A DNA stretch of 63,966 nt, filler included, from Salisapilia sapeloensis CBS 127946 (GCA_023334545.1; 4 parts of 4 records of this genome joined end to end with filler, not necessarily neighbours in it), one strand, 5' to 3'; positions 42,986 to 61,285 are shown, counted from the whole stretch's first letter. The notes: generated from the letters alone by a model not told the origin. Numbers and translations are program-made.

Positions 42986-45900
42986 ATGCAGGCGTCTGCC
43001 CCTCCATATACGCTCGGCGTATGCGTCATGGAGCGGAAGGCGAATTCGGCTCCCATGCAAGAGATCCTGTCTCGACTTCCGTCTTCACTTTTCACCATCG
43101 TTATCTTTGGTGACGACACAATCCTGAACAAACCGATTGAAGACTGGCCGGTGTGCAATGCCCTGATCTCGTTCTTTTCCTCAGGGTTCCCACTAGAGAA
43201 AGCGCAGGGTTATGTACGTCTGCGTCGTCCGGTTATTGTGAATGACCTCGAATCGGAGCCGCTCTTACGAGACCGACGAGACGTCTACCGAATCTTGCAA
43301 GAGGATAACATCCCTGTGCCTCGACACGTGACTGTAAATCGCGATGGGTATCGCGGGCTACCAGATTCTGAAGTGATTGAAGGGGAGGACTGCATTGAAG
43401 TGGATGGAGACAAGTTAACGAAGCCGTTTGTAGAAAAACCTGTGGATGGTGAAGATCATAATATATACATTTACTACCCTATGAGCGCGGGTGGCGGACG
43501 CAAGCGACTATTCCGGAAGGTTGGCAATCGATCGTCCGAGTTTGATCCACAGACGAATCGCGTACGGACTTCTGGTTCGTTCATCTATGAAGAGTTTCTT
43601 TCGACGCAAGGCACGGACGTGAAAGTGTATACTGTCGGTGCGAACTACGCTCATGCCGAAGCACGTAAAAGTCCTGTCTTGGATGGACGAGTTGTACGGG
43701 ACGCAGCGGGAAAAGAAGTCCGGTACCCAGTCATCCTATCGACAAAGGAAAAGGATATGGCTCAGAGAGTGAGTCGAGCGTTTCGTCAAACAATCTGTGG
43801 GTTTGATATCTTGCGCGGAACGAACCAGTCCTTTGTGTGTGATGTCAATGGCTGGAGCTTTGTCAAGAACTCTGAAAAGTACTATGAGGACTGCGCCACA
43901 TTGCTCAGTGGATATCTTGAGCAAGCTCTTCGGCAGCACGAAGTCGGTACGTTGGATACCGACTTGGAGGCTCGTGGAAACCCTGACCAGATGCCTGTCG
44001 GATTCATCGGCGCAGACGATCCGTTCTATCTGTCCAGCTTCCACTTCCCAGAGGCTGGTGCTGGTGCCCAATTGTCTGAACCTCCTACTCTACTCTCGAA
44101 ACACGGTAGCAGCAGCAACATTTATGAAGAGAGTCTGTTGCATGCCTCTGATGCACACTCGACTAGCAGCAACTTGAGCAACTCTATAGGTCCACCCGGT
44201 GAAGAAGGAGAAGAGTTGCGCTGCGTGTTGGCTGTCATTCGTCATGCTGACCGCACACCAAAGCAGAAGATGAAGATGCAAGTGTGCCATCCGTCGTTCC
44301 TAGACTTTTACCATGCTCGACAGTCGGACTCGTCCAAGAAGAAGGACTTAAAGATCAAGGCAGTGGCGGATTTAGAAAAGCTGCTAGAAGTCAGCAAGGA
44401 TCTCTTGCGGCGATACGATGAGCGGGAAGAGTCTTTTATGCACTTTTTATCGACGAGAGAAGAGAAGTATGAAGAAGACACTTCGGACCGGATGCAAGGG
44501 TACCGGACTTTACGAGACGTGCTCCAGCGTTGGCAACTGGTGGGTATTAACCGCAAGGTTCAGCTAAAGCCACGCGAGTATAGTGAGCCGGATGCGGATG
44601 GAAACGTCCAAGCGACCAAGCTGCTGCTGATTCTAAAGTGGGGAGGTGACTTGACCCACAGCGGAGAAGAGCAATCGGAGAGCTTGGGCAAGAGGTTCCG
44701 ACAGATGATGTATCCAGGAGGAGAAGGTGGTTTGCTACGACTGCACTCGACCTTTCGACATGACCTCAAGATCTACACGAGTGACGAAGGCCGTGTGCAA
44801 AAGACAGCTGCGAGCTTTGCCAAAGGTCTCTTGGAGCTAGAAGGAGATTTGATCCCGATTCTTGTCGGCCTGGTCCTCAAGTCCAAGGATGCCGATTCGA
44901 TGCTGGACCCGTCTGGCTCGGAAGCCCAGGAGATCATTATGCGCGTAAAGCAGCGATTGCACAAGATCATCCATCGCTTGGATGATACGGTGCAGCTCCT
45001 CGAGTCGGACTCTCGACTCATTCGCTCTGTTGCTCGTGCCTTGAACAGTATTTCGGAGCCGATCAAGAAGATGGAAGAGATGCATACGATGCTGCGGTAC
45101 TTGAAAGAGCAATTGACCAAGAACTTGCAGGAGAAGGCGAGACTACGGGCGGAGAATGCTTCGAAGCACCAGGATAATGTACTCCCGACGTACGCGTCCA
45201 TGGAGAGGTCCATTAGTTTGGGTGGCATTCGAAGTCGAAATGGTTCCCATGATCACATCTTCCCGGAAGACGATGAAGAGATGGATAGAGTCCATGAAAC
45301 TAATCGTAGTAAAGGTGAAGAAGTTCCGCCCTCCTCTCCTCCGATGGGTGCAGGTGCTAGTCGCCTACTCGCGAGGATGCGTCGACGCGTCGCGGAGGAA
45401 GAAGTGAACTTCCCAGAGCCATGCGGAAGGGAGACGCTAGAGATGATGCGCGAACGATGGGCCAAACTTCATCGTGACTTTTACAATAAGAAGAGCGACG
45501 CGTACGACTTGTCCAAAATCCCGGACATTCATGACTGCATCCGATACGACGCTCTGCACAACGCGCAACTGCACTTGACGAGCATGAGGAAGCTGTTGGA
45601 CATCTCTAGCTCCTTGTCGCATGCACTCGTGCCACAAGAGTACGGTATCAATGTGGAGGAGAAGGTGAACATTGGTGCTGCCATGTGCCGTACGTTGCTG
45701 ACGAAGATCAAGGACGATCTGGATCTTGCGAGAGGCTTGGAACTACAGAACATGCATCGATTGAATCCGTCGTACGTTAAAGACAAGATCAACTCGACGC
45801 ATCGAGCCGTTCGGACGCGACTGTACTTTACGAGTGAATCCCACTTGCATACGCTGCTCAATGTCCTACGATACCCACGAAGCGATTCACCTGTCGCAGC

Positions 45901-46261
45901 GGCGGTTGGAGAGGAAGCGAAGAAGTGGATTGAGACGATCCCAGAGCTGTGCTACATGACCCACTTTGTCTTTCGTGTCTTTGAACGCTTCCAATACGCC
46001 AAGGATGATCCGCAAAGGTACAGGCTGGAGATCTCCCTAAGTCCTGGCGCAGATAACGACCCGCTGCGTAGTGACACAGAGAGTGTGAATGACGTTGCGC
46101 CGTTAAAGATTATTTCGAGAGAAGGCGTGACGTGTCAAGAGTTTGTGGATTACCTTGCAGACGTGATTAACTTTGCTGAGCAGCGATTGGAGGCATCGGA
46201 GATTGCCAAAGCAACGCCGACTTCAAGTCCGAAGCAGAGCGAGTCGGAGGATCTTTCATAG
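42986..46261 (+). CDS. VIP1: Bifunctional inositol pyrophosphate kinase/phosphatase PPIP5K/VIP1 (1091 aa, single exon)
   Basis: ATP-grasp kinase motifs FFSSGFPL, FVEKPVDGEDHN, YEEFLSTQGTDVKVY, HAEARKSP and VCDVNGWSFVK. Histidine phosphatase motifs RHADRTPKQK, LKWGG, DEGRVQ and RTRLYFTSESH. Confidence 0.96.
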   Translation: MQASAPPYTLGVCVMERKANSAPMQEILSRLPSSLFTIVIFGDDTILNKPIEDWPVCNALISFFSSGFPLEKAQGYVRLRRPVIVNDLESEPLLRDRRDVYRILQEDNIPVPRHVTVNRDGYRGLPDSEVIEGEDCIEVDGDKLTKPFVEKPVDGEDHNIYIYYPMSAGGGRKRLFRKVGNRSSEFDPQTNRVRTSGSFIYEEFLSTQGTDVKVYTVGANYAHAEARKSPVLDGRVVRDAAGKEVRYPVILSTKEKDMAQRVSRAFRQTICGFDILRGTNQSFVCDVNGWSFVKNSEKYYEDCATLLSGYLEQALRQHEVGTLDTDLEARGNPDQMPVGFIGADDPFYLSSFHFPEAGAGAQLSEPPTLLSKHGSSSNIYEESLLHASDAHSTSSNLSNSIGPPGEEGEELRCVLAVIRHADRTPKQKMKMQVCHPSFLDFYHARQSDSSKKKDLKIKAVADLEKLLEVSKDLLRRYDEREESFMHFLSTREEKYEEDTSDRMQGYRTLRDVLQRWQLVGINRKVQLKPREYSEPDADGNVQATKLLLILKWGGDLTHSGEEQSESLGKRFRQMMYPGGEGGLLRLHSTFRHDLKIYTSDEGRVQKTAASFAKGLLELEGDLIPILVGLVLKSKDADSMLDPSGSEAQEIIMRVKQRLHKIIHRLDDTVQLLESDSRLIRSVARALNSISEPIKKMEEMHTMLRYLKEQLTKNLQEKARLRAENASKHQDNVLPTYASMERSISLGGIRSRNGSHDHIFPEDDEEMDRVHETNRSKGEEVPPSSPPMGAGASRLLARMRRRVAEEEVNFPEPCGRETLEMMRERWAKLHRDFYNKKSDAYDLSKIPDIHDCIRYDALHNAQLHLTSMRKLLDISSSLSHALVPQEYGINVEEKVNIGAAMCRTLLTKIKDDLDLARGLELQNMHRLNPSYVKDKINSTHRAVRTRLYFTSESHLHTLLNVLRYPRSDSPVAAAVGEEAKKWIETIPELCYMTHFVFRVFERFQYAKDDPQRYRLEISLSPGADNDPLRSDTESVNDVAPLKIISREGVTCQEFVDYLADVINFAEQRLEASEIAKATPTSSPKQSESEDLS

Positions 46262-46549
46262 TCGCCTTCATACAATGTACTAGACGGTAATACCATGTAC
46301 TTGGAAGAAAATATGTGCTTTGTTTTTAAGTTTTCTACTAGACGATAGGTGTCATGGAGCGAAAGCTCTTGGTGGGAAATATGCTTGAAAATCTGTAGAA
46401 TAGGAGCCAAAAAATGCTTCGAGTGAAACTCCATTGGGAGTTTCAAGCGATGACAGGGCAAAGCACTGTACGAAACGCCGGTAAGTCCAAATACATTTTG
46501 GTATTAGTCCAGTGACTTGTGCCTACGTAAATAACGATCTTGCGTCCCG

Positions 46550-49500
46550 ATGGATGATACGGTACCTCGTGGACCAGATATTGCATGGGCGTCTGGAAAG
46601 TCGGATCCTGCTATAGACTTTCGTCCTGCCACAAAGGTTCGGAGCATCGAGGCGAAGATTGCAAAGCGAAAAAAGGGTGGACAGCGTATCCGTGACGACA
46701 GTGACGACGATGATGATGATCTGTACGGGACGGACCCAAATAACTTGCCGTTGTCGCATGAACCTGACAGTCGAACAGGCCCAGCAACGGAAGACATAAA
46801 AAAGCTCTTCAGCACTGTACCACCCTTGGAGACGGAAGAACAAGCTGTAAATCCTCGAAGAAACACTGTCAGTGCTCTCTTGTCGGTTGTACAAAAGATA
46901 GCTGTCCCGGAAGTTCGTCGTGAAGCCAAGGTGCATTCGATTATGGAGATGCTAAGATTGCGAGCCGTGCACATGAAGCGCTCTCAATTGGCACTAGGAG
47001 CGCACACGACATCAGCTGCCTTAGTAGATGCAGTCTATGTGCTCGTGAGTGTGCCTTTACGTATTGGCTTCATGTACGACCCGTGGAATGGTATAGACAT
47101 GACGAATGAGTGGACTCGTACACTTACCGTTTTATCGATCTTGGATCTGATCGGTGAAATTGCTCGACTAGCTTTCATTGTTCGAGAACGAACGGTCATT
47201 TTTGCAAAACAAAAACGTAAACAACGTAGTAGGTCAGCTCGTTTATCGCTTGTTGAGCATGTAACGAGCCACTTTGCAAACGTACGAAGGAGCGTCGTTG
47301 TGCCAGAAAAGTCTATTGTATCGCTACGAAAGAGTAAAACTGGAATCGATACCGTCAATTCAAAGGGGGCTGTACGAAGGCCTAGTCTTAACGATGTAGA
47401 AGAAGTATCTAGCGTGCGAGAGCCTTTGTCTTCGAGCTCGCTGCCACGGATGATGAACTCGAAAATGACTGCCTTTGCATTCTTTCTTCCGTTGGAACTC
47501 GTCGCGGCCTACTTTAGCTACAACCTCATTCACGTCGCTCGTCTGCTAAAGTATTTGGCGATGGTATTTCAACTTCGCTGGGTATGTTCGTCCATATTAA
47601 AGAAGAATCGGTCATTTCGTATCGTGCGCCTGCTATCGTTTAGCACATTGTCAACTCCGTTTCACTTTTGCTGGGTCGGCTTTTACCTTTGTCATGTTAT
47701 TGCCAGCGGCTACATGTTCTTGGCGCATTTCAACTGTGGGATAAACTTTGATCAATGTGGATCGACATTGCTACATCCAGGTTGCTGGGCCATCAAGGAC
47801 AAGTTAGAGCATGCTTCGACAGTAAGAAAGTATTTAAGAGCACTCTACTGGGCAGTAAAATCTGTGTCGACACTTGGACAGGGTGACATTTTGCCGACGA
47901 ATGAGATGGAAACGTATTACTGCATTCTGGTCCAGTTGCTTAGTGGCATGTGGGCAACCGGTTTGCTAGCAGCTTGCTCATTCTACTTTACGCGCAGAGA
48001 TGGTGATCTCGGTCAAAGCGTCAGTACTCGCCTTGAGCAAGCACTACTGTTTTTAAAGTCCAGAAAGACACCAACTGAAATCTCGACTGCGATTCAAGCG
48101 TACTATGACTACATGCAGCGAACACGGAATGGCATTGAAGAACGAAGTGTGCTTGCAGAGATGCCACAGCAATACCGACTACAGTGTGCGAATTACTTGG
48201 CATACCGCTACATGAGAAAGGTATGTCTCTCTTCTATTATCGATGCGTAAATGCGCATGGATTGCAGTGACGCTAACGCATATGTCTGACTAGATCCCAT
48301 TTTTCTCTCAGCAGCCCAAGCCTTTTATGAAGACTGTACTCGGGTTAGTTGAAAAAGACTTCTTTTCGCCAAATCAAATTATAGCTAGACAAGGTGACTC
48401 GGAAGAGCTCATCGTGATCGCCCGAGGTGAAATTCGGGTTGTTCATTCAGAATCAAGGGAGATTGAGCAAGTATTAATGCGAGGAGAATGGATTGGGGAG
48501 AAGTCACTTTATCAAGATACGAATTTGAAGAAGGATTTGGTCGCTGGCACATTTTGTGACATCTTTTGTCTCTCGAGGCAAAACCTTCGTGCAGCTTTGT
48601 CACGACACTTTGCCAAATTTAAAATCTCTCTCATGATGGCACAGCACCGTCGTCAAGCAGTGTCAGATGAAGACACGAAGAAATGTCTGCAGTTCGTAAA
48701 TCCAAATCCACCAGTTAGCAAACACAACACAATTGTGAATCGAACGACTCGACGAATGACCAATGCTGTGGGAAGACGAACACTTCTGCTCAATGTCATG
48801 CAACGGGATTTTCATCTCGCAGGTGGTAGTGGCAGCCTGCATTGGCGATATCCACGCTCTCGTTTCCGTCTGCTATGGCGTCGTATCAAAGTCGCTTGTC
48901 TTATCTTCTTGTCGATTGAGGTACCTTTTGAAATCGCTTTTGATTGGCGTGTTAGTATTCTCCATGACGATACCATCCTTCGACAGAAACTGTCGTTTAT
49001 GGTCAGTGCCTTTGTGGAGTTCGTTCTTTACATCGACCTCTTTTTCCGAGCACGTCGTTTTATTCGCTTGCAAACGATATACGGACGCAAAGGTAATACA
49101 TCACCTCCGAAGAGTTCTCAAGCGCCAAGCGAAGTAGCATCGATCATTCATTCTTTTAAAGCTATGACAGACTCGGATGATTCACGCAGAGAGCGGAATC
49201 AAGAAAGTATCCGTGTGGATACGACAGTGGATATCGCTAGTGGAGAAGCCACAGCAAAGTCTAAAAGCGTCAACAAATGGCAAGAAGTATCTTATACTCG
49301 ACCGCAAGATATCTTTCACTGGTATCTACTACATGATAATGTCGTGGCTGATTGCCTCGCGACCGTACCCATTGCCCTCATTTGGAAACTTATTGACAAG
49401 ACTGACATGAACATAAATGCGATGCTCTGGATGAGATTTACTCGACTACTAGCGCTCGGAAGGTTGCTGCCATTGTGGGGATCGATTCAGAAAATCATGA

Positions 49501-52500
49501 CTGAGTATGGACTTAGTCCATCTGCCAAGCAGCTTGTCTCCATTGTCATTTCGTGTATAATTGCGGCCAACATTGTCGGATGCTTTTTCTTCCTTGTTGC
49601 AGATTCACCCGAATATGTAGATGGGTACCCGACTGGAGATTACCTTCGAACGGATGCAGAGTGCCTAGAAGACGCTAGTCTTTACGGGAATTGTACATGG
49701 TTTATAGCAGATTTGAGCAAGTTCCAGATTCAGTCGAGGTACGTGAGGTCTATTCATTGGAGCCTTGTTCTACTCTCCACAGTCGGATATGGTGATATCC
49801 ACGCTATATCAACGATCGAATGCCTACTCGCACTTATGTGGATCTTTGTCGGGTCGATCATTTGCTACTTTACTGCGTGTGCCATATCCAGTGTTGTCAC
49901 CCAAGTTACCATTCTATCTTCGATGCAACGAGAGCGACTGAATGAAATTAAGCGGGCCCTAGTGCATTGTAACATCTCAAGACGTACGCGGAACGTTATT
50001 CAGCGCCATTATGAGACGAAATGGAAGCTAAATGGAAGTACTGTCATCGAAACAGAGTTGCAGTCGTATCTACCGCGCTCTTTGCGGAATCAGCTCGCAC
50101 TTTCGATGTATGCAAAGCTTTTGCAGGAGTGTTATATACTGTCACCATGTGAATATCATCAAGCTTTCTTAAGGGAATTAGCATTGCGGACACATTCCGA
50201 GATCTTTGTGCCAAATGTGACGATACTGCACCTTGGACATCTGATCAAGGAAATGTATATTGTACAATCAGGAGACGTAGAAGTACTTTTACAAAGCGAG
50301 AGTGAGCAAGTGAGATTAAGTGCATACAGACCGTCTCAAGCGAGGATGATGCTAAACAGTTTCATGTCTGGCTCCAGACTTTCTTGGTGGTTGCGTGGAT
50401 TTTTCGCCTCCAAGCCCCTATCTTCTTTTATTTCGCCCCGGCTTAGCCTCGCTCGATTGTCTGTGTCATCGCTTACCGGGGATCTTCTTCCAATGGCAAT
50501 TCTATGTCGAGGAGCTTGCTTTGGTGAAGAATCGCTCTTGTCTGGAGAACAATTTGTCTCGAGGGTGAATGCGCGAGCTGTGACAAGTACGCAGGTTGCC
50601 GTGCTACCAAAAGAGGAATTAAGACAGTTGGCAGAGAAGTTCCCGCAGCAATTAGATGAAATTGCAGACCTGGTGGCAGCGAAGAGAAGATCGGATACGG
50701 AGCTCTATCGTACGCTAAAGCAGAATTTGAAGGAAAGAGGCAAGGTGAAAGAATTTTTAGGTGGCATTGGATCTTTACATGTGAGTCGAAAGCCACAAGA
50801 CAGGAAGATAATTGCTCCTGACTCGGCGCTAGCGGTAATCTGGCAATGTCTCCATGCATCCGTTCTGATGTATAACTTCTTTTCGATCACATTTCGCATC
50901 GCGTTCCTTCCGTACCCGTCAGAGGAGTTGGAAACAGTTATCAATGGCATCGACTACTTTAACGATCTAATCTTGTTCGCGCACATCTACTTGGCGTGGG
51001 GCAGGCTCGGTTACTATGCATATGGAGAAAAGATAATAGATCCATCCGCAGTTAAAGAACGATACAAGAGCACGACATTCCAAATAGACTGCTGGAGCAT
51101 GCTACCACCGTTTTACTACGGAAACACCTTTTACACTGCATTGCTCCGGCTGCCACGCTTACTTCGAAGTCCTCAATTACTTCCATTTATTGACGAGATG
51201 TATGAACGTCTAAGAGACATTATTTATCAGAGCAAGCGCAGCACCATTATGCTGGGCGTGTTCGACCTTGTCAAGTTTCTTCTCTTCTTTCTCGCGGCAG
51301 CTCATCAAGTTGGTAGTCTGTTCTTCACTTTAGGCCGCCTCCAGATTGAATATGGTCTAGCTTCCAAGAGCTGGGTGAATGTCGATAAGGTGTTAGCGCT
51401 GTACCCTGAGAAGCCGATCATTCAATACTTGCGATCTATTTACTGGTGTCTGGAAACGGTAATACACTCTAGCTGGCACATGTACCCGTATCTCACGCGA
51501 CGGTGCTAATGTGATTTTCTCTTTTAGTTTACAGTCGTTTGCTTTGGAGATATATTTCCTAGGAATGGTCTGGAGACTATCTACGCTTCTTGCACGTGTA
51601 TCATCGGTTGGATTGTACGCCTTTTTCATTTTACCAGCATAGTCATTTATTGCTTGTACTCATCGGTAGCAATCTAGGCTATCGGCTACGTTGTGGGAAA
51701 AATCACATCTCTCATGTCGAACTTGGACAAGGTACGGCATATATTCCGATTGCGTACTAGTTGACAATCTTAAAAATATCGTGGCATGTCATTTGTTAGG
51801 ATGAAAAAGATCACCGAGATCGAGTTAACGACTTTGAGCTGTACAGTTCTCGACTTCAGGTAATGCACTTGCATTTTCATAGGAAGTTGAAACAAGAAAA
51901 CTCAATATTGGTACGTATAGCTTCCTGCCTACCTTCGCGAAAGATCACTAGAGTCACTTGACTACAAAAGCAAGTGTCAATTGGAGATCAACATTCGCAA
52001 AACGTTTAAGGACTTACCGATATCTCTACAAGTAATACTCTTTGACGAGTTGTACGGTCCTGTGCTCCGTAAATGTCCAGAATTTTCCAGCTGCCTTTCA
52101 CGGCCACAGATAGAAGCGCTTGCGTGTGAGTTTACGCTTGAGCTCTATCTGCCGGAAGACGCGATTGTTGAAGAGGGACGAATCGGAACGAAATTGTATA
52201 TTATGCAGAAAGGGAGAGGCGAATGGTTTGCAGCTGGATCCAAGATCACTTTTGCTGGTATACACGAAGGGGTTATGTTTGGCGATTTAGCGTTCTTTCT
52301 TCCCGGTACAAGGTATATGGCTAGTGCTCGAGCTGTTAAAAGCTCTCAGGTCCTAATGCTTCGGCGTCGGCAATGGATGAAGCTTTGGCCGGACAAGAGT
52401 CGCCGGAATGTTGAAAGGAAGCTACTGCCCCTGATCAAGTCCAAGCACATCGCCATGACCAAAGCTTTCATCAACATTATAAAGAACTTTGAGGTGTCTA

Positions 52501-55337
52501 AATACGATGTTTCGACACATGCAAATCGTCATCAGCGAGGACATACAACGTCTAATCTTAATGCATTAAAACCATTAAGTTCAAAGGAATCAGCTCCTGA
52601 CGTATCGGAGGATTGTCCCGATCGTCCACAACTACGAGACATGAAAACAAATACAGCTCAAGTAAGCAGACGAAAGTTGTCATCTCATTTTGACATGCAA
52701 AACCATCCAGCCAAGTCATTGGATGCTACGAGCGCCGAGGCACATTGGAAACGGCATCAAAAGAATTTGCTCATGTTGTCCCTAATTGACCAGCATAATC
52801 GCATGGAGGCGGAAATCACGTACAGAGACCGAAGAGTTTCAAATGTAGAAAAAACGGGAGGATTGGAAGCACTGCATCTACAGAAAAGAATATCACCAAG
52901 GCTAAAAGAATATCATAGGGGAGATTCATCCAAAATGGTAGTTGATGAAGAAGCTACTCGAAACAAACCTAATTTAGAAGACGCCCAGCATGTCGGATTA
53001 CGGAATGAACCTACTGGAGATCGTACGAAAAGCTGTGTTCATCTCCCTAGTGCTACCGCCCAGGGTGGAACTGTCAAATTATTCTCCAACAAGTCTGTGA
53101 AAAACAATTTTAGTAAGCTACTTCCTACAAACCGGCGAAATCCATTTTCGCCTGATGAAAAGAAACTCGTACAAAAAAGGCGACGTCATTCGTTGCAAGG
53201 TCCGACACAAGAATATCGAAAATCGCTGGAATCAGTTCAGCTTTTCTCTAACGACATGCCGATTCCAGGAGTAGCTCACCGAGGATCTATAACGACCGCG
53301 GCGCGCAAACTGCAGTTAACTCCAGGTCTAGATTTGCAATCGTCTGCAAATGCCACAAAGCCACGCACAGCAAACTCCAAATTCCCTTTCGCCTCGTTTA
53401 ATTTACTCTCAGTAGTCCGTCAAATGCGTCCCAAGTCAACTTTGGGTCAAGGACTAGGCGTGGCGAACGCTAGAGATGACACTGCTGTTGGAAATTACCA
53501 CCAAGGAGACCAAGCTACTATTCATCATGAAAGTGCACCATCTGAAGATCCGGCTCTAGATGGCATTGATGAAATAGAACATTTACGAGTCCTACTGGAG
53601 AGATGGCGCCGACGCCAACGCAAACCTGGCTTAAGCAAGAAAAGCTCTGTCGTGCTTCCGATGGACCAAACACTAGAGTACCGGAACTTGTACCAGATCT
53701 GGGTCGAGCCACCGCCACCGCATTCTATGATGCTAGAGAGCTCATATTTCCGGAGATTTTGGAATGTACTTATGCTTCTGATCTGCTGGTACTACGTACT
53801 TGTAGTCCCATTCCGAGCTGCGTTTGACTACGAAGCACTTGACCACGTGGATGAACGACATGTCACGACGACTCTTTGGTTCATGATGGAATACGTTTGC
53901 GATCTGCTTTGCGTCATTGACTTCATTTTCAACTGCCGCTACTTTGCGTTCATCGATCGAGGGGAAGTGGTGACGGAACCAAAAGCTATCTTTGAGCATT
54001 ATTACCACGACGGCTCCTTTCTATCCGACCTTCTCGTGATATTCCCGTTTGAAGTATTTCTACCTTTCTACTCGGTCTGTATCGGTAAGACTGCATGGCC
54101 GACTTTAGCTACCGTTACTTGGTTTCAAATTGCAATACTTCGAATGACGAAAATGCTTCGCATCATCCACCTGCATGAACTGGGTGACCGAGTCCAACGG
54201 ATGATTCTGTTCGATATGAAACTGAGCTCTGTGCGAATGAGCTATTTGTTCTTCATTCGATGTGCATTGGATTTTATTCTTGGCGCACATTGGCTTTGTT
54301 GTGCATTCTTTGCAATATCATTTAATACATACAATGAAGACGTCCCGTCGTGGCTTACGACACCAGACATGCTGTCTTTCCTCGACATTGACGGAGCTAA
54401 AGGAATCGCTTCCGTCCCACTCAAAACGCGCTTCTTCCGCTCGTATCACTTTAGTATTGGCGCCGTCACCACCGTATCGTACGGAGACATTACACCACAG
54501 AATGCAGTAGAGACTTTGGTTGTCGTTGTGATCATTGTCTTCTCCGTCGTGTTCTTTGGTATGCTCTCCGGTGGATTCTTCCAACTACTTGAAGGTGAAC
54601 TCGGACGTCGAGCAGACTATGAAGAGCGAGTTGCTCGGGTCGCCCATTTCATGGTGTTTCATCGGCTACAACTACGAGTCTGGAAGCAGTTGCAACTCTA
54701 CTTTTCTATGCATTGGCAAGAAAGCAGAGGGCTGGATGAGACGCAGCAGCTTCGCGGAGTCACCACAGCGGTGAAAAACGATATCGCACTCTTTGTCAAG
54801 CGTCAATTTGTCGCGAAATTACCACTGTTTGCGAGTTGTGAAGAAGCATTTATACGAGCTGTCGTCATTGCGTTTGAACAGGAGCTTTACGTTCGAAGCG
54901 ATGTAATCATCGCCGAAGGAGATACTGGAAGAAGCTTGTACGTGATCGAAACTGGCCAAGTGCTCGTACGAGTTCCAAAGAAACCACCGAAACGTGACCT
55001 CAAAAGCTTTGATCAAAAGCATTCAGAAGACTCTGTAGTGGAACTGATCAAGACAAAGTATGACTTCTTCGGAGAAAAGTCACTGGTGCTGGACATGCCT
55101 CGAAGCGCTACATGTATCGCTCTTAGCTCCTGTCGAATGCTATTGCTGACGGTCGACAAGTACGAAGATATATTAGAAGAATTTCCAGAGTATCGAGAGA
55201 AGAATATGCGAGAGTGGATATTTGTCAATTTGCCAGATAACAACGCTCACCATGCAACACCTGAATCTATGGCAAAGAAGAAGGCATTTTGTGACCCGGA
55301 TGCATCCTATGACCCAGATGCATCCTTTCAGCCGTAG
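46550..55337 (+). CDS. Four-repeat cyclic-nucleotide-binding-domain cation channel (~2,817 aa): join(46550..48220,48294..51458,51528..51614,51678..51731,51800..51859,51921..55337)
   Basis: Five phase-0 GT-AG introns join the three track ORFs in frame. Four pore loops (STLGQGDI, STVGYGDI, TVVCFGDI, TTVSYGDI), each preceded by an Arg/Lys-bearing S4 and followed by a C-linker and CNBD. Confidence 0.85.
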
Positions 55338-56551: not shown

Positions 56552-58315
56552 TCATTGCTCTACTAATTCATCCAGTAGCATGGAAACAGACTTGTTCGTG
56601 TCGCTCAGCTTTTGGCATGCTGCTACGATGGCAGCGCGGAAATGAAGAGATCCTTTCTTCTTAAAAAGAGTGCCAAGATCGCGAGTCGTCTCGATGGGAT
56701 CTTCAATGCTGACGACTGCTTTTCGCCACACCTTAGCTTTCGTCCAGTTCTTCTCTTTCTTCGTCATCAATGCACGCTGTCGCAAGTTCACGACCGAGTT
56801 TGTCCAGTCAAACTTTCTCACGTAAAAGCAGAAAAATCGAACGGCAAGTACCCACCATGGTTCTACTTGACTCACGCAAAGTTCTGGATGTGCTGTTAAC
56901 GCCTCTTTGATTGACAAGCTCACAGTTTCTGGTGTTATCGTAGCAATCGTATCAGCGTCCTCTTTGTAGCAGCTCGTGATATCGATGACAGGTAGCTTTT
57001 CCTCCTGCTGCAAGTAGTGCAAGAACATGAGCAAGAGTCCGTAGGAGCTGATCTGATGGCCGAACGTAGCGTGATGACGTTGCCGCCAGCGTTTCAAGCA
57101 CAAAAATGCCTTTTGAATAGACAATCTTAGCGGTCCGCTGGCATCTATAAGCCCCCGAATGAGCTCCGTATTCCATAAAGCTGCCACGTTGTTTACGCTT
57201 AGCTCACATGGCACTGCTAGCATAGCATCTTGAAACTGTACGATAGGCACTCGGGCGTTTGTGATCGCGATAAAATTTGCATCGCTACTACTAGCTGCGT
57301 ACAGCTCCAAGTGTTCCTTCAGTTCGGCCACGATAGGAGCAGTGTCCTGGCGGAAGACGACGTCGGATGGGATGAGGACACAAAGATCCAAATCCTCAGA
57401 TCCGTTTTCCTCCGTTAATCCAGTTGATCTTGATCCGAAGGTGAAAACGCGAGCGTCAGGCCATAGCTGTTGTATACATTCTTGAATGCGATCGCGCACA
57501 TGATCACGCTCTGGATGACTCGATACCAGCGTTTTATGGACTTGTTGATCAGTAGAAGACTCTGCATGATCCCATTTTCCACGTACGACTCGCTGTTGCA
57601 ATAACAGAGAATAGCTGCTAGCATAAGATGGAATGAGGTGGAGCATCTTTTCTTCGGATAAACAGCGTTCCACCAACAAGCGCTGGAGATGCTTCCGTTC
57701 TGATTGCTGTTCTTCCGTCATAGACGATGTATCTTGCAGCAAAGATTTTACGGCATTTAAAGTCGTAGCACTGCTTATAGAAGAGGCTTGTTTCTGAGCT
57801 GATTGAAGCCATGGCCACAAGAACTCGTTTAATCGTACTTCGTTTGACAACATTGAAGTACTGGTATGCTGCAGAAACTTGGCTTTTAGAAGCATACTCT
57901 TCTCCGTATCAGTTTCAGCTTTTAAAATCTGTAAAGTCGTCTCCTGCTGAGGTTTTAGCCGTTTGGTGTAGTGTCCTGCGGCTTTAGCTGCCTCCATTTT
58001 CCACAGTAGATTATGCAGCAAGTGCATTTTGGCCTCTTCCGTGCCTATCTGGAGAACCATATTCTGTCCGACATCCCAATCTCGACTATCCACTTTCTCT
58101 CCCTTGTCTTGAGTGGTCGTGCACTTGGCAATCCATTCATCCAACGTCGCTAAGGACACCAGCTCGTCATTGCTACACTTTCTACTTGATACACCAGATG
58201 CATCAGCAAGTCCCGATTGCGCTCGTCTAGCAAGACGCTCTGCTTTGGATTTCTTCGCGCCCTTACTCCCATGTCGCTTCCTCTTCCGAGTACTTGCACC
58301 TGCCGTGGTACTCAT
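56552..58315 (-). CDS. Terminal nucleotidyltransferase (Cid1/TUT/TENT family non-canonical poly(A/U) polymerase)
   Basis: FGSRSTG...EDLDLCV, ARVPIVQF, CELSVNN, SSYGLLLMFLHYLQ and the PAP-associated IEDPIETTRDLG; basic NLS-like N-terminus. Confidence 0.88.
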   Translation of the reverse strand: MSTTAGASTRKRKRHGSKGAKKSKAERLARRAQSGLADASGVSSRKCSNDELVSLATLDEWIAKCTTTQDKGEKVDSRDWDVGQNMVLQIGTEEAKMHLLHNLLWKMEAAKAAGHYTKRLKPQQETTLQILKAETDTEKSMLLKAKFLQHTSTSMLSNEVRLNEFLWPWLQSAQKQASSISSATTLNAVKSLLQDTSSMTEEQQSERKHLQRLLVERCLSEEKMLHLIPSYASSYSLLLQQRVVRGKWDHAESSTDQQVHKTLVSSHPERDHVRDRIQECIQQLWPDARVFTFGSRSTGLTEENGSEDLDLCVLIPSDVVFRQDTAPIVAELKEHLELYAASSSDANFIAITNARVPIVQFQDAMLAVPCELSVNNVAALWNTELIRGLIDASGPLRLSIQKAFLCLKRWRQRHHATFGHQISSYGLLLMFLHYLQQEEKLPVIDITSCYKEDADTIATITPETVSLSIKEALTAHPELCVSQVEPWWVLAVRFFCFYVRKFDWTNSVVNLRQRALMTKKEKNWTKAKVWRKAVVSIEDPIETTRDLGTLFKKKGSLHFRAAIVAACQKLSDTNKSVSMLLDELVEQ

Positions 58316-58564: not shown

Positions 58565-59641
58565 CTACTGCTCTTGCGCAATATCATCTTCCGTCTCTTC
58601 CACAATGGCTCCGAAGGCCAAGAATCGCGAATATCGCATGTAACGACGGACGAGAACAGTCGATAGATCAGGGTCCGTCTCGAGGAACGTGTCGTTGTCA
58701 CGTGGAACGATCTCTGGTTCCTCCTGACGCTCGCCGCTTTCCATGAACCTCTCGACTGCCCTCAAATTCCCGCTGCTGGCGCACTCGAGCATGTACAGCA
58801 CCTGATTATGACGGTGGTGCCTCGCCACATCGACAGCCGTCTCTTCTGCCACGTTTGGCATATCCGGGTCGCCGCCAGCAGTGATGAGCAAGTAGACGCT
58901 CTGGACGTCTCCTTGCGCACATGCAAAGTGCATTGGAGAATTACCATCGCGGTCTTCCGCGTATGGGTCTGCGCCACGGTCCAACAGCATTTCCACGACT
59001 TCCGACCGCCCTTCTTGGCATGCAAGCATGAGTGCAGTACGTTGCGACCGGGAGGCTTCCACGTCACAACTCCATCGCTTCCGCTCTTCCTCTTGCACCG
59101 GCTTATGCTGTAAGAACTGACGCACGACGTCAGCGTGACCTTGCTTGGCGGCAATGTGCAGAGGCAGGAGTCCGTTGGCAGCATGCTGCGTGACGCTCGC
59201 ACCATTTTGGAGCAAAACGGTAACCATACGCTCTTTTCCGAGAGAGCTGGCAATGTACAATGCGCTGTAGCCGTCCAATGTCACGTCGTCGACGTCGGCA
59301 CCGTAGTGGAGAAGGACTTGAGCGACGGCGCAATACCCGTGCGACGCGGCCAAGTAGAGCAAGGACTGTCCCAAGGCCGTGCGTGCCTGTACGTCTCCGC
59401 CTGCGGAAAGGAGTTCCTCTACCTCATTCACATGTCCTTTCGAGACAGCGTCCAACAACTTGTGCTTTCGTGCTTTGGCTGCAGCAGCGAGTTTCGCGAT
59501 ATTTCGGCCGAGGAAATGCCAAAGACGCGTGGGGTTGTCATGCGGGACATTGCTCTTGGACTGCTTAGCAGCAGTGCGCGACTCGGTGTCCGGCAACGGT
59601 GCGTCTTGGGCTGGATTTTCAAATGTCATTGGAGACGGCAT
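58565..59641 (-). CDS. Ankyrin-repeat protein
   Basis: Tandem G-x-T/S-[AP]-L-H/Y-x-A repeats: GQSLLYLAA, GYSALYIAS, GLLPLHIAA, QRTALMLAC, GNSPMHFAC. Confidence 0.9.
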   Translation of the reverse strand: MPSPMTFENPAQDAPLPDTESRTAAKQSKSNVPHDNPTRLWHFLGRNIAKLAAAAKARKHKLLDAVSKGHVNEVEELLSAGGDVQARTALGQSLLYLAASHGYCAVAQVLLHYGADVDDVTLDGYSALYIASSLGKERMVTVLLQNGASVTQHAANGLLPLHIAAKQGHADVVRQFLQHKPVQEEERKRWSCDVEASRSQRTALMLACQEGRSEVVEMLLDRGADPYAEDRDGNSPMHFACAQGDVQSVYLLITAGGDPDMPNVAEETAVDVARHHRHNQVLYMLECASSGNLRAVERFMESGERQEEPEIVPRDNDTFLETDPDLSTVLVRRYMRYSRFLAFGAIVEETEDDIAQEQ

Positions 59642-60006: not shown

Positions 60007-61285
60007 ATGGCAGGAAGGATGACCAAGGCCATGAGCCCAGTCGCGAGGCTCTCCATCGCACCCATGGTACGATACGTCGCACATGAATATGTGGAAATGC
60101 TAATATGGATACTAGATGGACTGGACCGATAGGCACTATCGATACCTCATGCGTCTCATCACCAAACATACGCTACTGTACACCGAAATGGTAGTCGACC
60201 AGACCGTACGTATTGCATGACGCAGTCTATAATCAAATTAATTATCTAATGGAATGCAATAAAGTTGCTGCATCAACGGAAGAACTTGGATTATTTTCTT
60301 GGTCATGATGCGACCGAAGCGCCACTAGCTGTCCAATTGGGTGGCAACAGCGTCGAAGATCTTGGAGGTACTCCCATGTCAATCACCCATCTACATCCGT
60401 CATCTCATACGTGATCTAGTTGCTGCCAAGATATGCCAGGACTATGGTGGCTTTTGTGAAATTAATCTCAACACTGGATGTCCGAGCTCGACCGTCTCTA
60501 AGCGTTGCTTTGGCGCCAAGCTCATGCTAGACCCCGATCTCGTTCGCGATATCTGTAATTCCATGCAAAGCCAGCTAGAGCCTTCGGAGCACAAGCCGGA
60601 AGTAACTGTCAAGTGCCGACTCGGCGTGGACGACCATGACAGTTACGAAGAGCTCCATCATTTTGTCTCGACGGTCGCTAGTGCCGGCATTACCCACTTC
60701 ATTGTGCACGCCCGCAAGTGCTGGTTGAAAGGCCTCAGTCCGCATGAAAACCGGACGGTTCCACCTCTTCAGTACGAACGCGTGTACAAACTCAAGGAAG
60801 ACTTTCCACATTTGTACTTTTCACTGAACGGAGGCGTCTCGGGCGTCGACCATGCGTTGGAACTACTTAAGACAACGCCAGTGGATGGTGTCATGATCGG
60901 TCGAGCTGCTTACAACTTTCCGTGGAAGCTTCGAGATGCCGATACGAAGATCTTTGGCGCAGCAGAAGATCCGAATTTCTCTAGACGCGAGATCATCGCG
61001 ACGTACCTTGACTACGCAGAGAAGCTGCAGGCCGAGTGGGGAGCTGACAAGCCTCTAACGGATGTGCCGTACACGATGCCAACGTCTGAACTGTTGAAGC
61101 CTCTGTTAACGTTGTTTGCTGGCGAACATGGTGGGAAGGCATTTAAGCGAGAGATTGCGAAGCAGTGGGGAGGGAAAGATAGTCGCCCAGCGCTTCGAGA
61201 TATGGTGTACAACGCCATCAAAGTCATCCCGGATGACGTGCTGGACGCAAGAGCGAATGATGTAATAGAGGAACAAGCTAGCTGA
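60007..61285 (+). CDS. dusA: tRNA-dihydrouridine synthase, DusA-like, multi-exon
   Basis: Spliced [48 protein letters not shown] (catalytic Cys), [13 protein letters not shown]...[27 protein letters not shown]. Confidence 0.9.

What the first reader, a model, noticed from the sequence alone, without database searches (positions are those of the whole stretch)
46550..55337. Concatenated four-repeat CNBD channel with four different selectivity filters and one canonical nucleotide site
Seen in sequence: the three track ORFs splice through five phase-0 introns into ~2,817 aa with four 6TM-pore-CNBD modules. The filters differ: TLGQGD, TVGYGD (the only canonical K+ signature), VVCFGD and TVSYGD. 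Only CNBD4 keeps a canonical phosphate-binding cassette (FGEKSL...PRSA); CNBD1-3 read IGEKSL...NLKK, FGEESL...SRVNA and FGDLAF...TRYMA. Established: CNG/HCN/KCNH channels are normally four separate subunits, while the sperm CNGK (tetraKCNG) channel is a single-chain four-repeat channel gated through one CNBD and involved in chemotaxis. Inference: an independently built pseudo-tetramer with an asymmetric pore and possibly unusual selectivity, a candidate for zoospore chemotaxis or encystment signalling.
Basis: partly seen in the sequence, partly recalled or inferred. Interest (0 to 1): 0.82.

Follow-up and report, generated by a model that had tools for sequence, protein, structure and literature searches.

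The report
Four-repeat oomycete CNBD channel, asymmetric pore
This is one expressed oomycete gene encoding an ion channel in which four different channel subunits are fused into a single chain; it belongs to an old stramenopile family that built this design independently of the animal sperm channel CNGK and keeps four fixed, non-identical pore filters.

Summary
Window 46550-55337 (+) is one six-exon gene with five phase-0 GT-AG introns of 61-73 nt. It encodes 2,817 aa made of four 6TM-pore-C-linker-CNBD modules. The filters are TLGQGD, TVGYGD, VVCFGD and TVSYGD, and only CNBD4 has a fully canonical phosphate-binding cassette. Spliced RNA contigs from four public runs show all five introns removed exactly as modelled, and they bridge the repeat boundaries.

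The gene is not a one-off. It is collinear with 2,500-2,900-aa proteins annotated in Pythium, Lagenidium, Phytophthora and Albugo. Four-repeat relatives also occur in Aphanomyces and in the non-oomycete stramenopiles Platysulcus, Cantina and Aureoumbra.

In repeat trees, R1-R4 mostly group by repeat index across stramenopiles, whereas all holozoan CNGK repeats form a separate clade. An AU test rejects shared R4 ancestry (p = 2.5e-5). The fusion is therefore independent of CNGK, but ancient.

The filter asymmetry is conserved: TLGQGD is invariant in 17 peronosporalean proteins, and R3 is never canonical in any family member.

My inference, untested here, is a cyclic-nucleotide-modulated cation channel with reduced K+ selectivity, driven mainly through CNBD4. 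I found no paper describing this four-repeat family. I class it as a new variant of a known kind.

The parts
46550..48220 (+). Exon 1 (aa 1-557): N-terminal tail, repeat 1 S1-S6 (47018-47977), start of C-linker 1
   Evidence: ORF and first ATG after a stop. Donor GTATGT at 48221. RNA contigs in runs X1 and X3 join 48220 to 48294.
47870..47887 (+). Filter 1, TLGQGD (aa 441-446)
   Evidence: Invariant in 17 of 17 peronosporalean homologues.
48221..48293 (+). Intron 1, 73 nt, GT-AG, phase 0
   Evidence: Spliced out in RNA contigs of X1 and X3.
48294..51458 (+). Exon 2 (aa 558-1612): CNBD1, repeat 2 with C-linker and CNBD2, repeat 3 S1 to pore helix
   Evidence: Continuous 1,055-codon frame. Pfam cNMP_binding x2, Ion_trans, Ion_trans_2. 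X1 contig 50231-51068 bridges CNBD2 to repeat 3.
48492..48533 (+). CNBD1 phosphate-binding cassette, IGEKSL..NLKK, with no Arg at the canonical position
   Evidence: CNBD1 is degenerate in all oomycete homologues.
49779..49796 (+). Filter 2, TVGYGD, the only canonical K+ signature
   Evidence: TVG[YF]GD is conserved in nearly all family members.
50520..50573 (+). CNBD2 cassette, FGEESL..SRVNA (Gly-Glu kept, loop 3 residues longer than canonical)
51459..51527 (+). Intron 2, 69 nt, GT-AG, phase 0, lying between the pore helix and the filter of repeat 3
   Evidence: Spliced out in all four runs.
51528..51614 (+). Exon 3 (aa 1613-1641): filter 3 VVCFGD (51534-51551) and the first part of S6
   Evidence: RNA joints on both sides. 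VVCFGD is shared with [Pythium] brassicae P0163, Lagenidium P0004 and Platysulcus P0016.
51615..51677 (+). Intron 3, 63 nt, GT-AG, phase 0
51678..51731 (+). Exon 4 (aa 1642-1659): rest of S6 of repeat 3
51732..51799 (+). Intron 4, 68 nt, GT-AG, phase 0
51800..51859 (+). Exon 5 (aa 1660-1679): start of C-linker 3
51860..51920 (+). Intron 5, 61 nt, GT-AG, phase 0
   Evidence: Spliced out in X1, X2 and X3.
51921..55337 (+). Exon 6 (aa 1680-2817 plus stop): C-linker 3 and CNBD3, ~400-aa low-complexity linker (52521-53738), repeat 4 S1-S6 (53766-54572), C-linker 4 and CNBD4
   Evidence: A 4,231-nt RNA contig in X3 runs from 50886 through all four downstream introns to beyond 54000. AF2 model of 53700-55334 has pLDDT 85.5 and matches the CNG/HCN/KCNH fold.
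52278..52322 (+). CNBD3 cassette, FGDLAF..TRYMA (Glu to Asp, Arg present, Thr to Tyr plus a one-residue insertion)
   Evidence: HMMER alignment to SthK.
54471..54488 (+). Filter 4, TVSYGD (first Gly of GYG replaced by Ser)
   Evidence: TV[CS]YGD in all peronosporalean homologues.
55068..55109 (+). CNBD4 cassette, FGEKSL..PRSA, canonical (Gly, Glu, Arg, Ser, Ala)
   Evidence: Aligns residue for residue with the PKA RII-alpha site B cassette. Conserved in most oomycete homologues examined, Aphanomyces and Platysulcus, but lost in two Lagenidium paralogues, P0006 and P0012.

Best explanation
SHOWN. Window 46550-55337 (+) is one transcribed, correctly spliced six-exon gene of an oomycete. It encodes a 2,817-aa single-chain pseudo-tetrameric channel of the CNBD-channel superfamily, with four complete S1-S6/pore/C-linker/CNBD modules. 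It is a member, nearest to [Pythium] brassicae PybrP1_008099 and a Lagenidium giganteum protein, of an ancient stramenopile family. In that family each of the four repeats is mostly orthologous to the same-numbered repeat in other species. The family arose independently of the holozoan sperm channel CNGK. Its four selectivity-filter strands are fixed, different sequences. Only repeat 2 keeps T-V-G-Y/F-G-D, and repeat 3 is never canonical anywhere in the family. In peronosporalean oomycetes repeat 1 is invariantly TLGQGD and repeat 4 is TV(C/S)YGD.

INFERRED. The four pore domains of one chain surround a single asymmetric pore. Two strands lack the first filter glycine; the same G-to-S and G-to-C changes abolish K+ selectivity in GIRK2. 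A third strand has Gln in place of the aromatic residue. The channel therefore most likely conducts cations with reduced or lost K+ selectivity. Gating is most likely modulated by cAMP or cGMP binding mainly at CNBD4, the one site with a canonical and widely conserved cassette. CNBD3 may contribute, and CNBD1 and CNBD2 probably serve as structural or allosteric modules. The S4 segments carry only about three basic residues each, so voltage dependence is probably weak. A role in flagellate spore (zoospore) signalling is plausible but not tested here.
For: Gene model: 5 phase-0 GT-AG introns, 2,817 aa, no internal stop.

RNA: all five joints are present in spliced contigs of up to 4 runs. Contigs bridge R1 to CNBD1, CNBD2 to R3, and R3 through to R4.

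Domains: Pfam; four pore-to-CNBD modules by HMM; six hydrophobic segments plus an S4-like motif per repeat. Solved-structure matches to hERG, HCN1, SthK and CNGA1 at E of about 1e-24 to 1e-29. AF2 model of repeat 4 has pLDDT 85.5 and pTM 0.71. Its Foldseek top hits are CNGA1/B1, CNGA3/B3, Eag1, GORK and HCN1 at E 1e-21 to 1e-23.

Family: end-to-end collinear alignment at 40.5% over 2,800 aa to P0163, plus 2,500-2,900-aa homologues in Lagenidium, Pythium, Phytophthora and Albugo. Four-repeat relatives in Aphanomyces, Platysulcus, Cantina and Aureoumbra.

Repeat-wise orthology: FastTree on 236 repeats. IQ-TREE supports are A_R1 96/93, A_R2 88/85, A_R4 88/65, with A_R3 in two starred clades. The window's four repeats are each nearest P0163 and P0004.

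Independence from CNGK: the CNGK group was identified by named echinoderm, hemichordate, cnidarian, sponge and amphioxus proteins. All 24 CNGK repeats form one clade at 100/93. The AU test gives p = 2.5e-5.

Filter and cassette conservation. CNBD4 aligns to the PKA RII-alpha cassette.

Selectivity analogy: GIRK2 G154S loses selectivity (PMC9001731). G154C has a widened filter, loses K+ selectivity and passes Na+ (bioRxiv 10.64898/2026.07.28.741201).

Spore context: CNG-type channel genes of P. infestans are expressed mostly in sporangia and zoospores (PMC5322657).
Against: There is no electrophysiology, ligand binding or localisation for any member of this family, so conduction, selectivity and gating are inference.

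The GIRK2 analogy comes from a homotetramer mutated in all four strands. Here single strands differ, and K2P and HCN channels show that non-canonical filters can still favour K+.

CNBDs with canonical-looking cassettes can be ligand-insensitive (zebrafish CNGK, KCNH; PMC4749565).

No single RNA contig spans the whole gene. Contig depth is about twice as high over the 3' part in two runs. This could be 3' bias or a shorter isoform.

The life stage of the RNA samples is unknown.

The P. nicotianae family member PPTG_07772 was not found in the held text of a zoospore membrane proteome supplement.
Confidence: 0.6

Rival explanations
1. It works like sperm CNGK: a K+-selective, cyclic-nucleotide-opened channel that hyperpolarises the cell. 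The odd filter strands would be tolerated because backbone carbonyls, not side chains, coordinate K+.
For: Same four-repeat CNBD architecture as CNGK (PMC4749565). The closing G-D of the filter is kept in all four strands, and repeat 2 is canonical. Some K+ channels tolerate non-aromatic residues at the Tyr position (own knowledge of K2P and Kir filters).
Against: Two strands lack the first filter glycine. G-to-S and G-to-C at that position destroy K+ selectivity in GIRK2 (PMC9001731). CNGK carries GYG or GFG in its pore (PMC4749565), whereas here only one of four strands does. The family is not in the CNGK clade.
Confidence: 0.22
2. The central pore is non-conducting. The protein would act through another route, for example ion flow through a voltage-sensor domain as in HCNL1, or as a cyclic-nucleotide-binding scaffold or sensor.
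For: Three of four filter strands are non-canonical. A precedent exists in the CNBD superfamily: HCNL1 has a non-conducting pore and conducts protons through its voltage sensor (PMC7306766, abstract seen).
Against: The non-canonical filter motifs are among the most conserved positions. TLGQGD is 100% invariant, and the Cys of R3 and G-D of all strands are invariant, against a mean column majority of 0.68. That argues for selection on a working filter. S5, pore helix and S6 are intact in all repeats.
Confidence: 0.08
3. The locus holds two or more separate channel genes, for example two two-repeat tandem genes of the kind reported for oomycetes, and the four-repeat chain is an artefact of reading through.
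For: Two-repeat tandem CNBD channels were reported for Aphanomyces invadans and P. infestans (PMC7576140). No single RNA contig covers the whole gene, and depth is higher at the 3' end in two runs.
Against: There is no stop codon between repeats 1/2, 2/3 or 3/4 once the five verified introns are removed. RNA contigs bridge CNBD2 to R3, and R3 to R4, in one piece. More than 15 species have collinear 2,500-2,900-aa annotated proteins. All four repeats show the same species branching. A 1,535-aa P. infestans T30-4 model falls in the same 90% cluster as 2,533- and 2,713-aa models from newer assemblies, so short models can be truncations.
Confidence: 0.03
4. It is a decaying or silent pseudogene copy of a channel gene.
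For: Three degenerate CNBD cassettes and three non-canonical filters could look like decay.
Against: An 8.4-kb frame is intact after splicing. The gene is transcribed and accurately spliced in four runs. The same 'degenerate' residues are conserved across genera.
Confidence: 0.01

Closest known systems
CNGK / tetraKCNG (cyclic nucleotide-gated K+ channel of sea urchin, zebrafish and other holozoan sperm; Bonigk 2009, Fechner 2015 PMC4749565)
   Same: One polypeptide carries four 6TM-pore-C-linker-CNBD repeats forming a pseudo-tetramer. The CNBDs are functionally unequal: ApCNGK is gated through one CNBD. It is associated with flagellate swimming cells.
   Different: Independent origin: all CNGK repeats form one clade apart from this family's R1-R4 clades, and the AU test gives p = 2.5e-5. 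CNGK carries GYG or GFG in its pore, whereas here only repeat 2 does. The canonical CNBD is the fourth here and the third in ApCNGK. This protein has a ~400-aa R3-R4 linker and is 2,817 aa, against about 2,100-2,270 aa for CNGK. CNGK is holozoan; this family is stramenopile.
[quoted passage not shown] 2020, PMC7576140)
   Same: Oomycete CNBD-superfamily channels with internally fused, strongly diverged repeats that co-evolve. S4-S5 linkers are short and the C-linker and CNBD are full length.
   Different: That paper reports two repeats, and four-repeat forms only for metazoan and choanoflagellate CNGK. Here there are four repeats, verified by RNA and by collinear homologues. I could not obtain the paper's sequences, so I could not test whether its oomycete entries are truncated models of this family. 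One truncated P. infestans model of this family does exist.
Heteromeric CNG channels (CNGA1/CNGB1 3:1, CNGA3/CNGB3) and the HCN/KCNH/plant GORK-SKOR/SthK subunit fold
   Same: Same subunit fold. The AF2 model of repeat 4 matches them at TM 0.63-0.68 normalised to the query and 0.73-0.81 to the target, with E 1e-21 to 1e-23. Sequence matches are E of about 1e-24 to 1e-29. Heteromeric CNG channels also have a pore lined by non-identical strands.
   Different: Those are separate subunits that assemble. Here stoichiometry and order are fixed by covalent fusion, and all four strands differ.
Four-domain voltage-gated Na+/Ca2+ channels (Nav, Cav, NALCN)
   Same: A single chain of four diverged 6TM domains whose non-equivalent filter residues set selectivity. 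This is the same evolutionary logic: fusion first, then asymmetry.
   Different: A different superfamily branch with no C-linker or CNBD. The filters are of the DEKA/EEEE type rather than a K+-channel-like TxGxGD strand.

Membership tests
CNBD-channel superfamily (HCN/CNG/KCNH/plant Shaker-like/SthK) | S1-S6 with P-loop, followed by a C-linker and a cyclic-nucleotide-binding-domain fold | tested here: met
   Pfam Ion_trans, Ion_trans_2 and cNMP_binding. phmmer to hERG, HCN1, SthK and CNGA1 covers S1 to CNBD. AF2 model plus Foldseek. All four modules match the pore-to-CNBD HMM nearly full length.
CNBD-channel superfamily (HCN/CNG/KCNH/plant Shaker-like/SthK) | Short S4-S5 linker (non-domain-swapped architecture; fewer than 10 residues per PMC7576140) | tested here: met
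   In the AF2 model of repeat 4, helix 141-172 (S4) and helix 180-209 (S5) are separated by about 7 residues. This is model-based and only for repeat 4.
CNGK / tetraKCNG | Four 6TM-pore-CNBD repeats in one polypeptide | tested here: met
   RNA support.
CNGK / tetraKCNG | Canonical GYG or GFG K+ signature in the pore (PMC4749565) | tested here: not met
   Only repeat 2 (TVGYGD) has it. The others are TLGQGD, VVCFGD and TVSYGD.
CNGK / tetraKCNG | Phylogenetic membership: repeats group with the same-numbered CNGK repeats or within the CNGK clade | tested here: not met
   All 24 CNGK repeats form one clade (100/93) that excludes the window's repeats. The AU test rejects R4+R4 monophyly, delta lnL 74.9, p = 2.5e-5.
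CNGK / tetraKCNG | K+-selective current opened by cGMP binding at a single CNBD (ApCNGK) | not testable with these tools
   Needs electrophysiology. Sequence shows one canonical cassette, in CNBD4.
Stramenopile four-repeat CNBD channel family (unnamed; defined here) | Each repeat orthologous to the same-numbered repeat of other members | tested here: met
   FastTree: R2, R3 and R4 each form one clade of 47 proteins and R1 two clades, support 0.92-0.99. IQ-TREE: the window's R1-R4 are each nearest P0163 and P0004 with starred support. A_R1 is 96/93, A_R2 88/85, A_R4 88/65, and A_R3 splits into two starred clades.
Stramenopile four-repeat CNBD channel family (unnamed; defined here) | Non-canonical filter in repeat 3 with a canonical filter in repeat 2 | tested here: met
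   R3 is VVCFGD, VDCFGD, VVVIGD, LVGSRE and similar, and never TxG[YF]GD, in all 47 members. R2 is TVG[YF]GD in nearly all.
[quoted passage not shown] | Exactly two fused 6TM-CNBD repeats | tested here: not met
   Four repeats in one spliced frame.

The most novel reading that the evidence does not exclude
Stramenopiles evolved their own pseudo-tetrameric CNBD channel, independently of animals, more than once removed from any characterised channel. After the fusion, its four filter strands specialised into fixed, non-equivalent sequences. This would be the CNBD-superfamily counterpart of the DEKA/EEEE asymmetry of Nav and Cav channels. The oomycete proteins would then be cyclic-nucleotide-gated Na+/Ca2+-permeable (depolarising) channels opened through a single CNBD (the fourth), coupling cAMP or cGMP to flagellar Ca2+ signalling in zoospores. 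That is a signalling polarity opposite to sperm CNGK.
Probability: 0.3. Interest if true: 0.82.

Novelty: new variant of a known kind. Interest (0 to 1): 0.64.

Why it matters
Covalent fusion of four channel subunits allows each pore strand and each ligand site to evolve separately. So far this has been studied in Nav/Cav/TPC channels and, within the CNBD superfamily, only in sperm CNGK.

This gene documents a second, independent and much more asymmetric case. It is conserved across oomycetes, including major crop and animal pathogens, and across other stramenopiles, with multiple paralogues per genome.

It gives a natural experiment on three questions: how many canonical K+-filter strands a pore needs, how one functional CNBD can gate a four-repeat channel, and how cyclic nucleotides feed into zoospore behaviour. 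Pozdnyakov et al. (PMC7576140) already pointed out that tandem channels absent from hosts could be considered as targets for oomycete control.

It also indicates that at least some older, shorter oomycete gene models for this family are truncated.

Tried and rejected

2. My first hand-set exon boundaries were off by 1-2 nt and gave 58 stops. I corrected them after inspecting the junctions.

3. A word-indexed protein search with a full-length Lagenidium homologue returned only 26 hits and no CNGK. CNGK sequences came only from a region-limited search with an all-GYGD metagenomic protein.

4. PDB holds no CNGK or other four-repeat CNBD channel structure.

5. The ESM Atlas look-up confirmed only the general class.

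I rebuilt the alignment without them.

7. I looked for stage or location evidence. PPTG_07772, the P. nicotianae member, is absent from the held text of the zoospore membrane-proteome supplements. No channel terms are findable in the held supplements of the P. infestans life-stage RNA-seq paper. Neither absence is informative, because long files are cut.

8. Literature searches for a described four-repeat CNBD channel in oomycetes or stramenopiles found only Pozdnyakov 2020, which covers two-repeat forms.

9. Rejected readings: recent tandem duplication, because the repeats are 20-25% identical; pseudogene; two separate genes.

10. Not attempted: folding the whole 2,817-aa chain or a four-pore assembly. 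The size limit is 1,200 aa, and joined constructs are not window sequence.

Full report

Yes. The piece contains three long + strand frames: 46535-48247, 48294-51506 and 51921-55334. Reading the two gaps shows consensus GT...AG introns.

With exons 46550-48220, 48294-51458, 51528-51614, 51678-51731, 51800-51859 and 51921-55337, the CDS is 8,454 nt. That gives 2,817 aa plus a stop, with no internal stop. All five introns (73, 69, 63, 68 and 61 nt) are phase 0. A first attempt with boundaries 1-2 nt off failed, so the solution is not forgiving.

| Repeat | Filter (first aa) | Cassette (first aa) |
|---|---|---|
| 1 | TLGQGD (441) | IGEKSL..NLKK (624) |
| 2 | TVGYGD (1053) | FGEESL..SRVNA (1300) |
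| 3 | VVCFGD (1615) | FGDLAF..TRYMA (1799) |
| 4 | TVSYGD (2530) | FGEKSL..PRSA (2729) |

VVCFGD is in none of the three big ORFs. It sits in the 87-nt exon 3, immediately after intron 2, which splits the pore helix from the filter of repeat 3.

**2. Is it one gene?**

Four public runs of the same organism hold this sequence. Their assembled contigs, laid on 48100-54000, show each of the five introns removed at exactly the predicted positions. Intron 1 is removed in two runs, introns 2-4 in all four, and intron 5 in three. Spliced joints also show that these libraries are RNA-derived.

- One contig (818 nt, run X1) joins the repeat-1 C-linker to CNBD1.
- One contig (50231-51068) joins CNBD2 to S1 of repeat 3.
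- One contig (4,231 nt, run X3) runs from 50886 through introns 2-5, CNBD3 and the long linker into repeat 4, and past 54000.

There is no stop codon anywhere between repeats.

Limits of this evidence:
- No single contig spans the whole gene.
- The listed pieces leave 49078-49236 uncovered, at depth 3-9x.
- The 3' contigs have about twice the depth in two runs. This fits 3' bias, but I cannot exclude an additional shorter isoform.

The upstream gene is a separate PPIP5K/Vip1 ORF at 42986-46261. Its best matches are 61-67% identical in Globisporangium, Pythium, Lagenidium and Phytophthora, and 54-56% in Saprolegniales. The window therefore comes from a peronosporalean-lineage oomycete without a close sequenced relative in the database.

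**3. Anatomy**

Pfam finds Ion_trans, Ion_trans_2 and cNMP_binding in the pieces. An HMM of the pore-helix-to-CNBD region finds exactly four near-full-length modules, at aa 396-730, 1009-1343, 1570-1896 and 2479-2817. Each module is preceded by hydrophobic S1-S3 and S5 segments and an S4-like segment with about three basic residues at three-residue spacing.

Repeat 4 aligns from S1 to the CNBD with hERG, HCN1 and SthK at E = 1e-29 to 1e-27. Repeat 2 aligns with CNGA1 at 7e-24.

An AF2 model of repeat 4, built on 30 family sequences, has pLDDT 85.5 and pTM 0.71. It shows a short S4-S5 connection, a complete C-linker and a beta-roll CNBD. Foldseek places it with CNGA1/B1, CNGA3/B3, Eag1, GORK and HCN1 at E 1e-21 to 1e-23, with target-normalised TM up to 0.81.

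The four repeats are only 20-25% identical to one another. A ~400-aa low-complexity linker separates CNBD3 from repeat 4.

**4. Relatives**

An exhaustive HMMER search with exon 2 gave 4,992 hits at E < 1e-3. Of the roughly 170 proteins fetched, 61 had four near-complete pore-CNBD modules, and the 59 with exactly four module hits went into the repeat trees.

Named members are listed below.

| Organism | Detail |
|---|---|
| Lagenidium giganteum | four genes, 2,461-2,755 aa |
| [Pythium] brassicae | two adjacent locus tags |
| Pythium insidiosum | one model (3,245 aa, also carrying glucosidase domains) |
| At least ten Phytophthora species | 2,176-2,841 aa; names include 'VIC superfamily', 'Ion transport protein' and 'Potassium voltage-gated channel subfamily H member 6' |
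| Albugo laibachii | 2,821 aa |
| Aphanomyces stellatus | 2,485 aa, partial |
| Platysulcus tardus, Cantina marsupialis, Aureoumbra lagunensis (non-oomycete stramenopiles) | four-repeat relatives |

The window protein aligns end to end with PybrP1_008099 (P0163): 40.5% identity over 2,800 aa, covering model aa 58-2783. The gene is therefore a normal member of a multi-paralog family that is already in the databases, uncharacterised.

A 1,535-aa P. infestans T30-4 model falls in the same 90% cluster as 2,533- and 2,713-aa models from newer assemblies. Older short models of this family can therefore be truncations.

**5. Origin of the four-repeat design**

In a FastTree of 236 repeats from 59 four-repeat proteins, the repeats of 47 proteins group by repeat index, with support 0.92-0.99. 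Two smaller groups behave differently.

A region-limited search identified one of these groups as holozoan CNGK. It contains proteins of sea urchins (Lytechinus, Diadema), starfish, sea cucumber, crinoids, acorn worms, Nematostella, corals, a sponge, amphioxus and an ichthyosporean. This matches the CNGK taxon list of Fechner et al..

I then ran a careful IQ-TREE analysis (LG+C20+F+G4, 99 repeats, 259 columns):
- All 24 CNGK repeats fall in one clade (100/93).
- The stramenopile R1 forms a clade at 96/93, R2 at 88/85 and R4 at 88/65. R3 falls into two starred clades.
- R2 and R4 are sisters at 84/85.
- All four window repeats sit with P0163 and P0004, with the same branching.

Forcing stramenopile R4 and CNGK R4 into one clade costs 74.9 lnL units (p-AU = 2.5e-5). 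The building event, however, predates the divergence of oomycetes from other stramenopiles.

A ciliate four-repeat protein and an unnamed marine metagenomic group suggest further independent fusions.

**6. The asymmetry is conserved**

Across 17 peronosporalean proteins the filter strands are highly conserved:

| Repeat | Filter across the 17 proteins |
|---|---|
| R1 | TLGQGD, 100% invariant |
| R2 | TVG(Y/F)GD |
| R3 | V(D/V)CFGD, with Cys and G-D invariant |
| R4 | TV(C/S)YGD |

For comparison, the mean column majority is 0.67-0.73.

The window shares the VVCFGD plus TVSYGD combination with P0163 and P0004, its closest relatives. VVCFGD also occurs in Platysulcus. The ochrophyte-like members have VVVIGD, and a second oomycete subfamily has LVGSRE. 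No family member has a canonical R3, while R2 is almost always canonical.

The ancestral state therefore looks like three canonical strands plus one degenerate strand, with further specialisation of R1 and R4 in oomycetes.

The CNBDs follow the same logic:
- **CNBD4.** The cassette FGE(K/R)SL..PR(S/N/T)AT is conserved in most oomycete homologues examined, in Aphanomyces and in Platysulcus; two Lagenidium paralogues (P0006, P0012) have lost it. It aligns residue for residue with the PKA RII-alpha site B cassette.
- **CNBD1.** It has lost the Arg. In most homologues it has also lost the Gly-Glu.
- **CNBD2.** It keeps Gly-Glu but has a longer loop.
- **CNBD3.** It keeps an Arg or Lys, with Glu to Asp and a one-residue insertion. 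HMMER aligns the window's Arg to the SthK cassette Arg, so CNBD3 is ambiguous rather than clearly dead.

**7. How it most likely works (inference)**

One chain supplies all four pore domains, so the stoichiometry and order of the four different strands are fixed.

The first glycine of GYG is replaced by Ser in R4 and by Cys in R3. In GIRK2, G-to-S at this glycine (the weaver change) causes loss of selectivity (PMC9001731). G-to-C widens the filter, abolishes K+ selectivity and lets Na+ through (bioRxiv 10.64898/2026.07.28.741201). R1 has Gln instead of the aromatic residue.

I therefore favour a cation channel with reduced K+ selectivity. Ligand input would come chiefly through CNBD4, and voltage dependence would be weak. 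Strong conservation of the odd filter residues argues for a working pore rather than a dead one.

The caveats are real. The GIRK2 data come from homotetramers. Canonical-looking CNBDs can be ligand-insensitive, as in zebrafish CNGK. Nothing has been measured for any member of this family.

A zoospore role is plausible. CNG-type channel and cyclic-nucleotide genes of P. infestans are expressed mostly in sporangia and zoospores (PMC5322657). I could not link that to this family.

**8. Comparison and novelty**

The protein works like, but is not a member of, CNGK. It meets the architecture criterion and fails the filter and phylogeny criteria.

The only paper I found on fused CNBD channels in oomycetes reports two-repeat forms and reserves four-repeat forms for metazoan and choanoflagellate CNGK (PMC7576140). 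Searches for a described stramenopile four-repeat family found nothing else. The searchable library is limited to open-access papers and preprints.

I class it as a new variant of a known kind. It is an independently evolved, strongly asymmetric pseudo-tetrameric CNBD channel family, of which this gene is an ordinary, expressed member.

Noticed in passing
window 42986-46261 (+): Intron-free 1,091-aa ORF encoding a PPIP5K/Vip1-type inositol pyrophosphate kinase (PPIP5K2_N, RimK ATP-grasp and His_Phos_2 domains). It ends 288 nt upstream of the channel's start codon. Best matches are 61-67% identical in Globisporangium, Pythium, Lagenidium and Phytophthora, and 54-56% in Saprolegniales, which places the organism.
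   Followed up: partly
window 52878-52968: One RNA contig of run X1 skips 91 nt with CT..AC ends, which reads as GT..AG on the minus strand. Only 27 nt lie on the shorter side. It could be an antisense spliced transcript inside the low-complexity linker, or an assembly artefact. It is not seen in the other three runs.
   Followed up: no
window ~52900-55337: RNA contig depth over the last 2.4 kb (repeat 4) is about twice that of upstream contigs in runs X1 and X4, slightly higher in X2 and flat in X3. This could be 3' bias or an additional shorter, repeat-4-only transcript. Contig depths cannot distinguish the two.
   Followed up: no
window 51459-51527 (intron 2), with P0001-P0003: Intron 2 lies exactly between the pore helix and the filter of repeat 3. 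Three ORF-level protein predictions from other assemblies (1,019-1,039 aa, 39-42% identical) start near the window's exon-2 start and end within a few residues of its exon-2 end. This suggests both flanking introns are conserved in relatives.
   Followed up: partly
window 56552-58315 (-), 58565-59641 (-), 60341-61285 (+), 61289-61891 (-): Downstream genes are a Cid1/PAP-associated nucleotidyltransferase and an ankyrin-repeat protein. There are also two adjacent, convergently oriented ORFs that both match the dihydrouridine synthase (Dus) profile. These could be two Dus genes or an inverted partial duplication.
   Followed up: no
P0364 versus P0164 and P0363 (Phytophthora infestans): The T30-4 reference model XP_002901268.1 (1,535 aa, 'VIC superfamily') clusters at 90% identity or more with 2,533- and 2,713-aa models from newer assemblies. 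At least this older oomycete model of the family is truncated. This may bear on published counts of 'two-repeat' tandem channels.
   Followed up: partly
P0036, P0041, P0049, P0105, P0109, P0121, P0150 (L001 is a TARA Oceans scaffold); P0347 (Tetrahymena): A further group of intron-free four-repeat CNBD channels from marine metagenomes has mostly canonical GYGD filters. A 3,380-aa ciliate four-repeat protein also exists. Neither groups with the stramenopile family or with CNGK, hinting that CNBD-channel fusion happened several times.
   Followed up: partly
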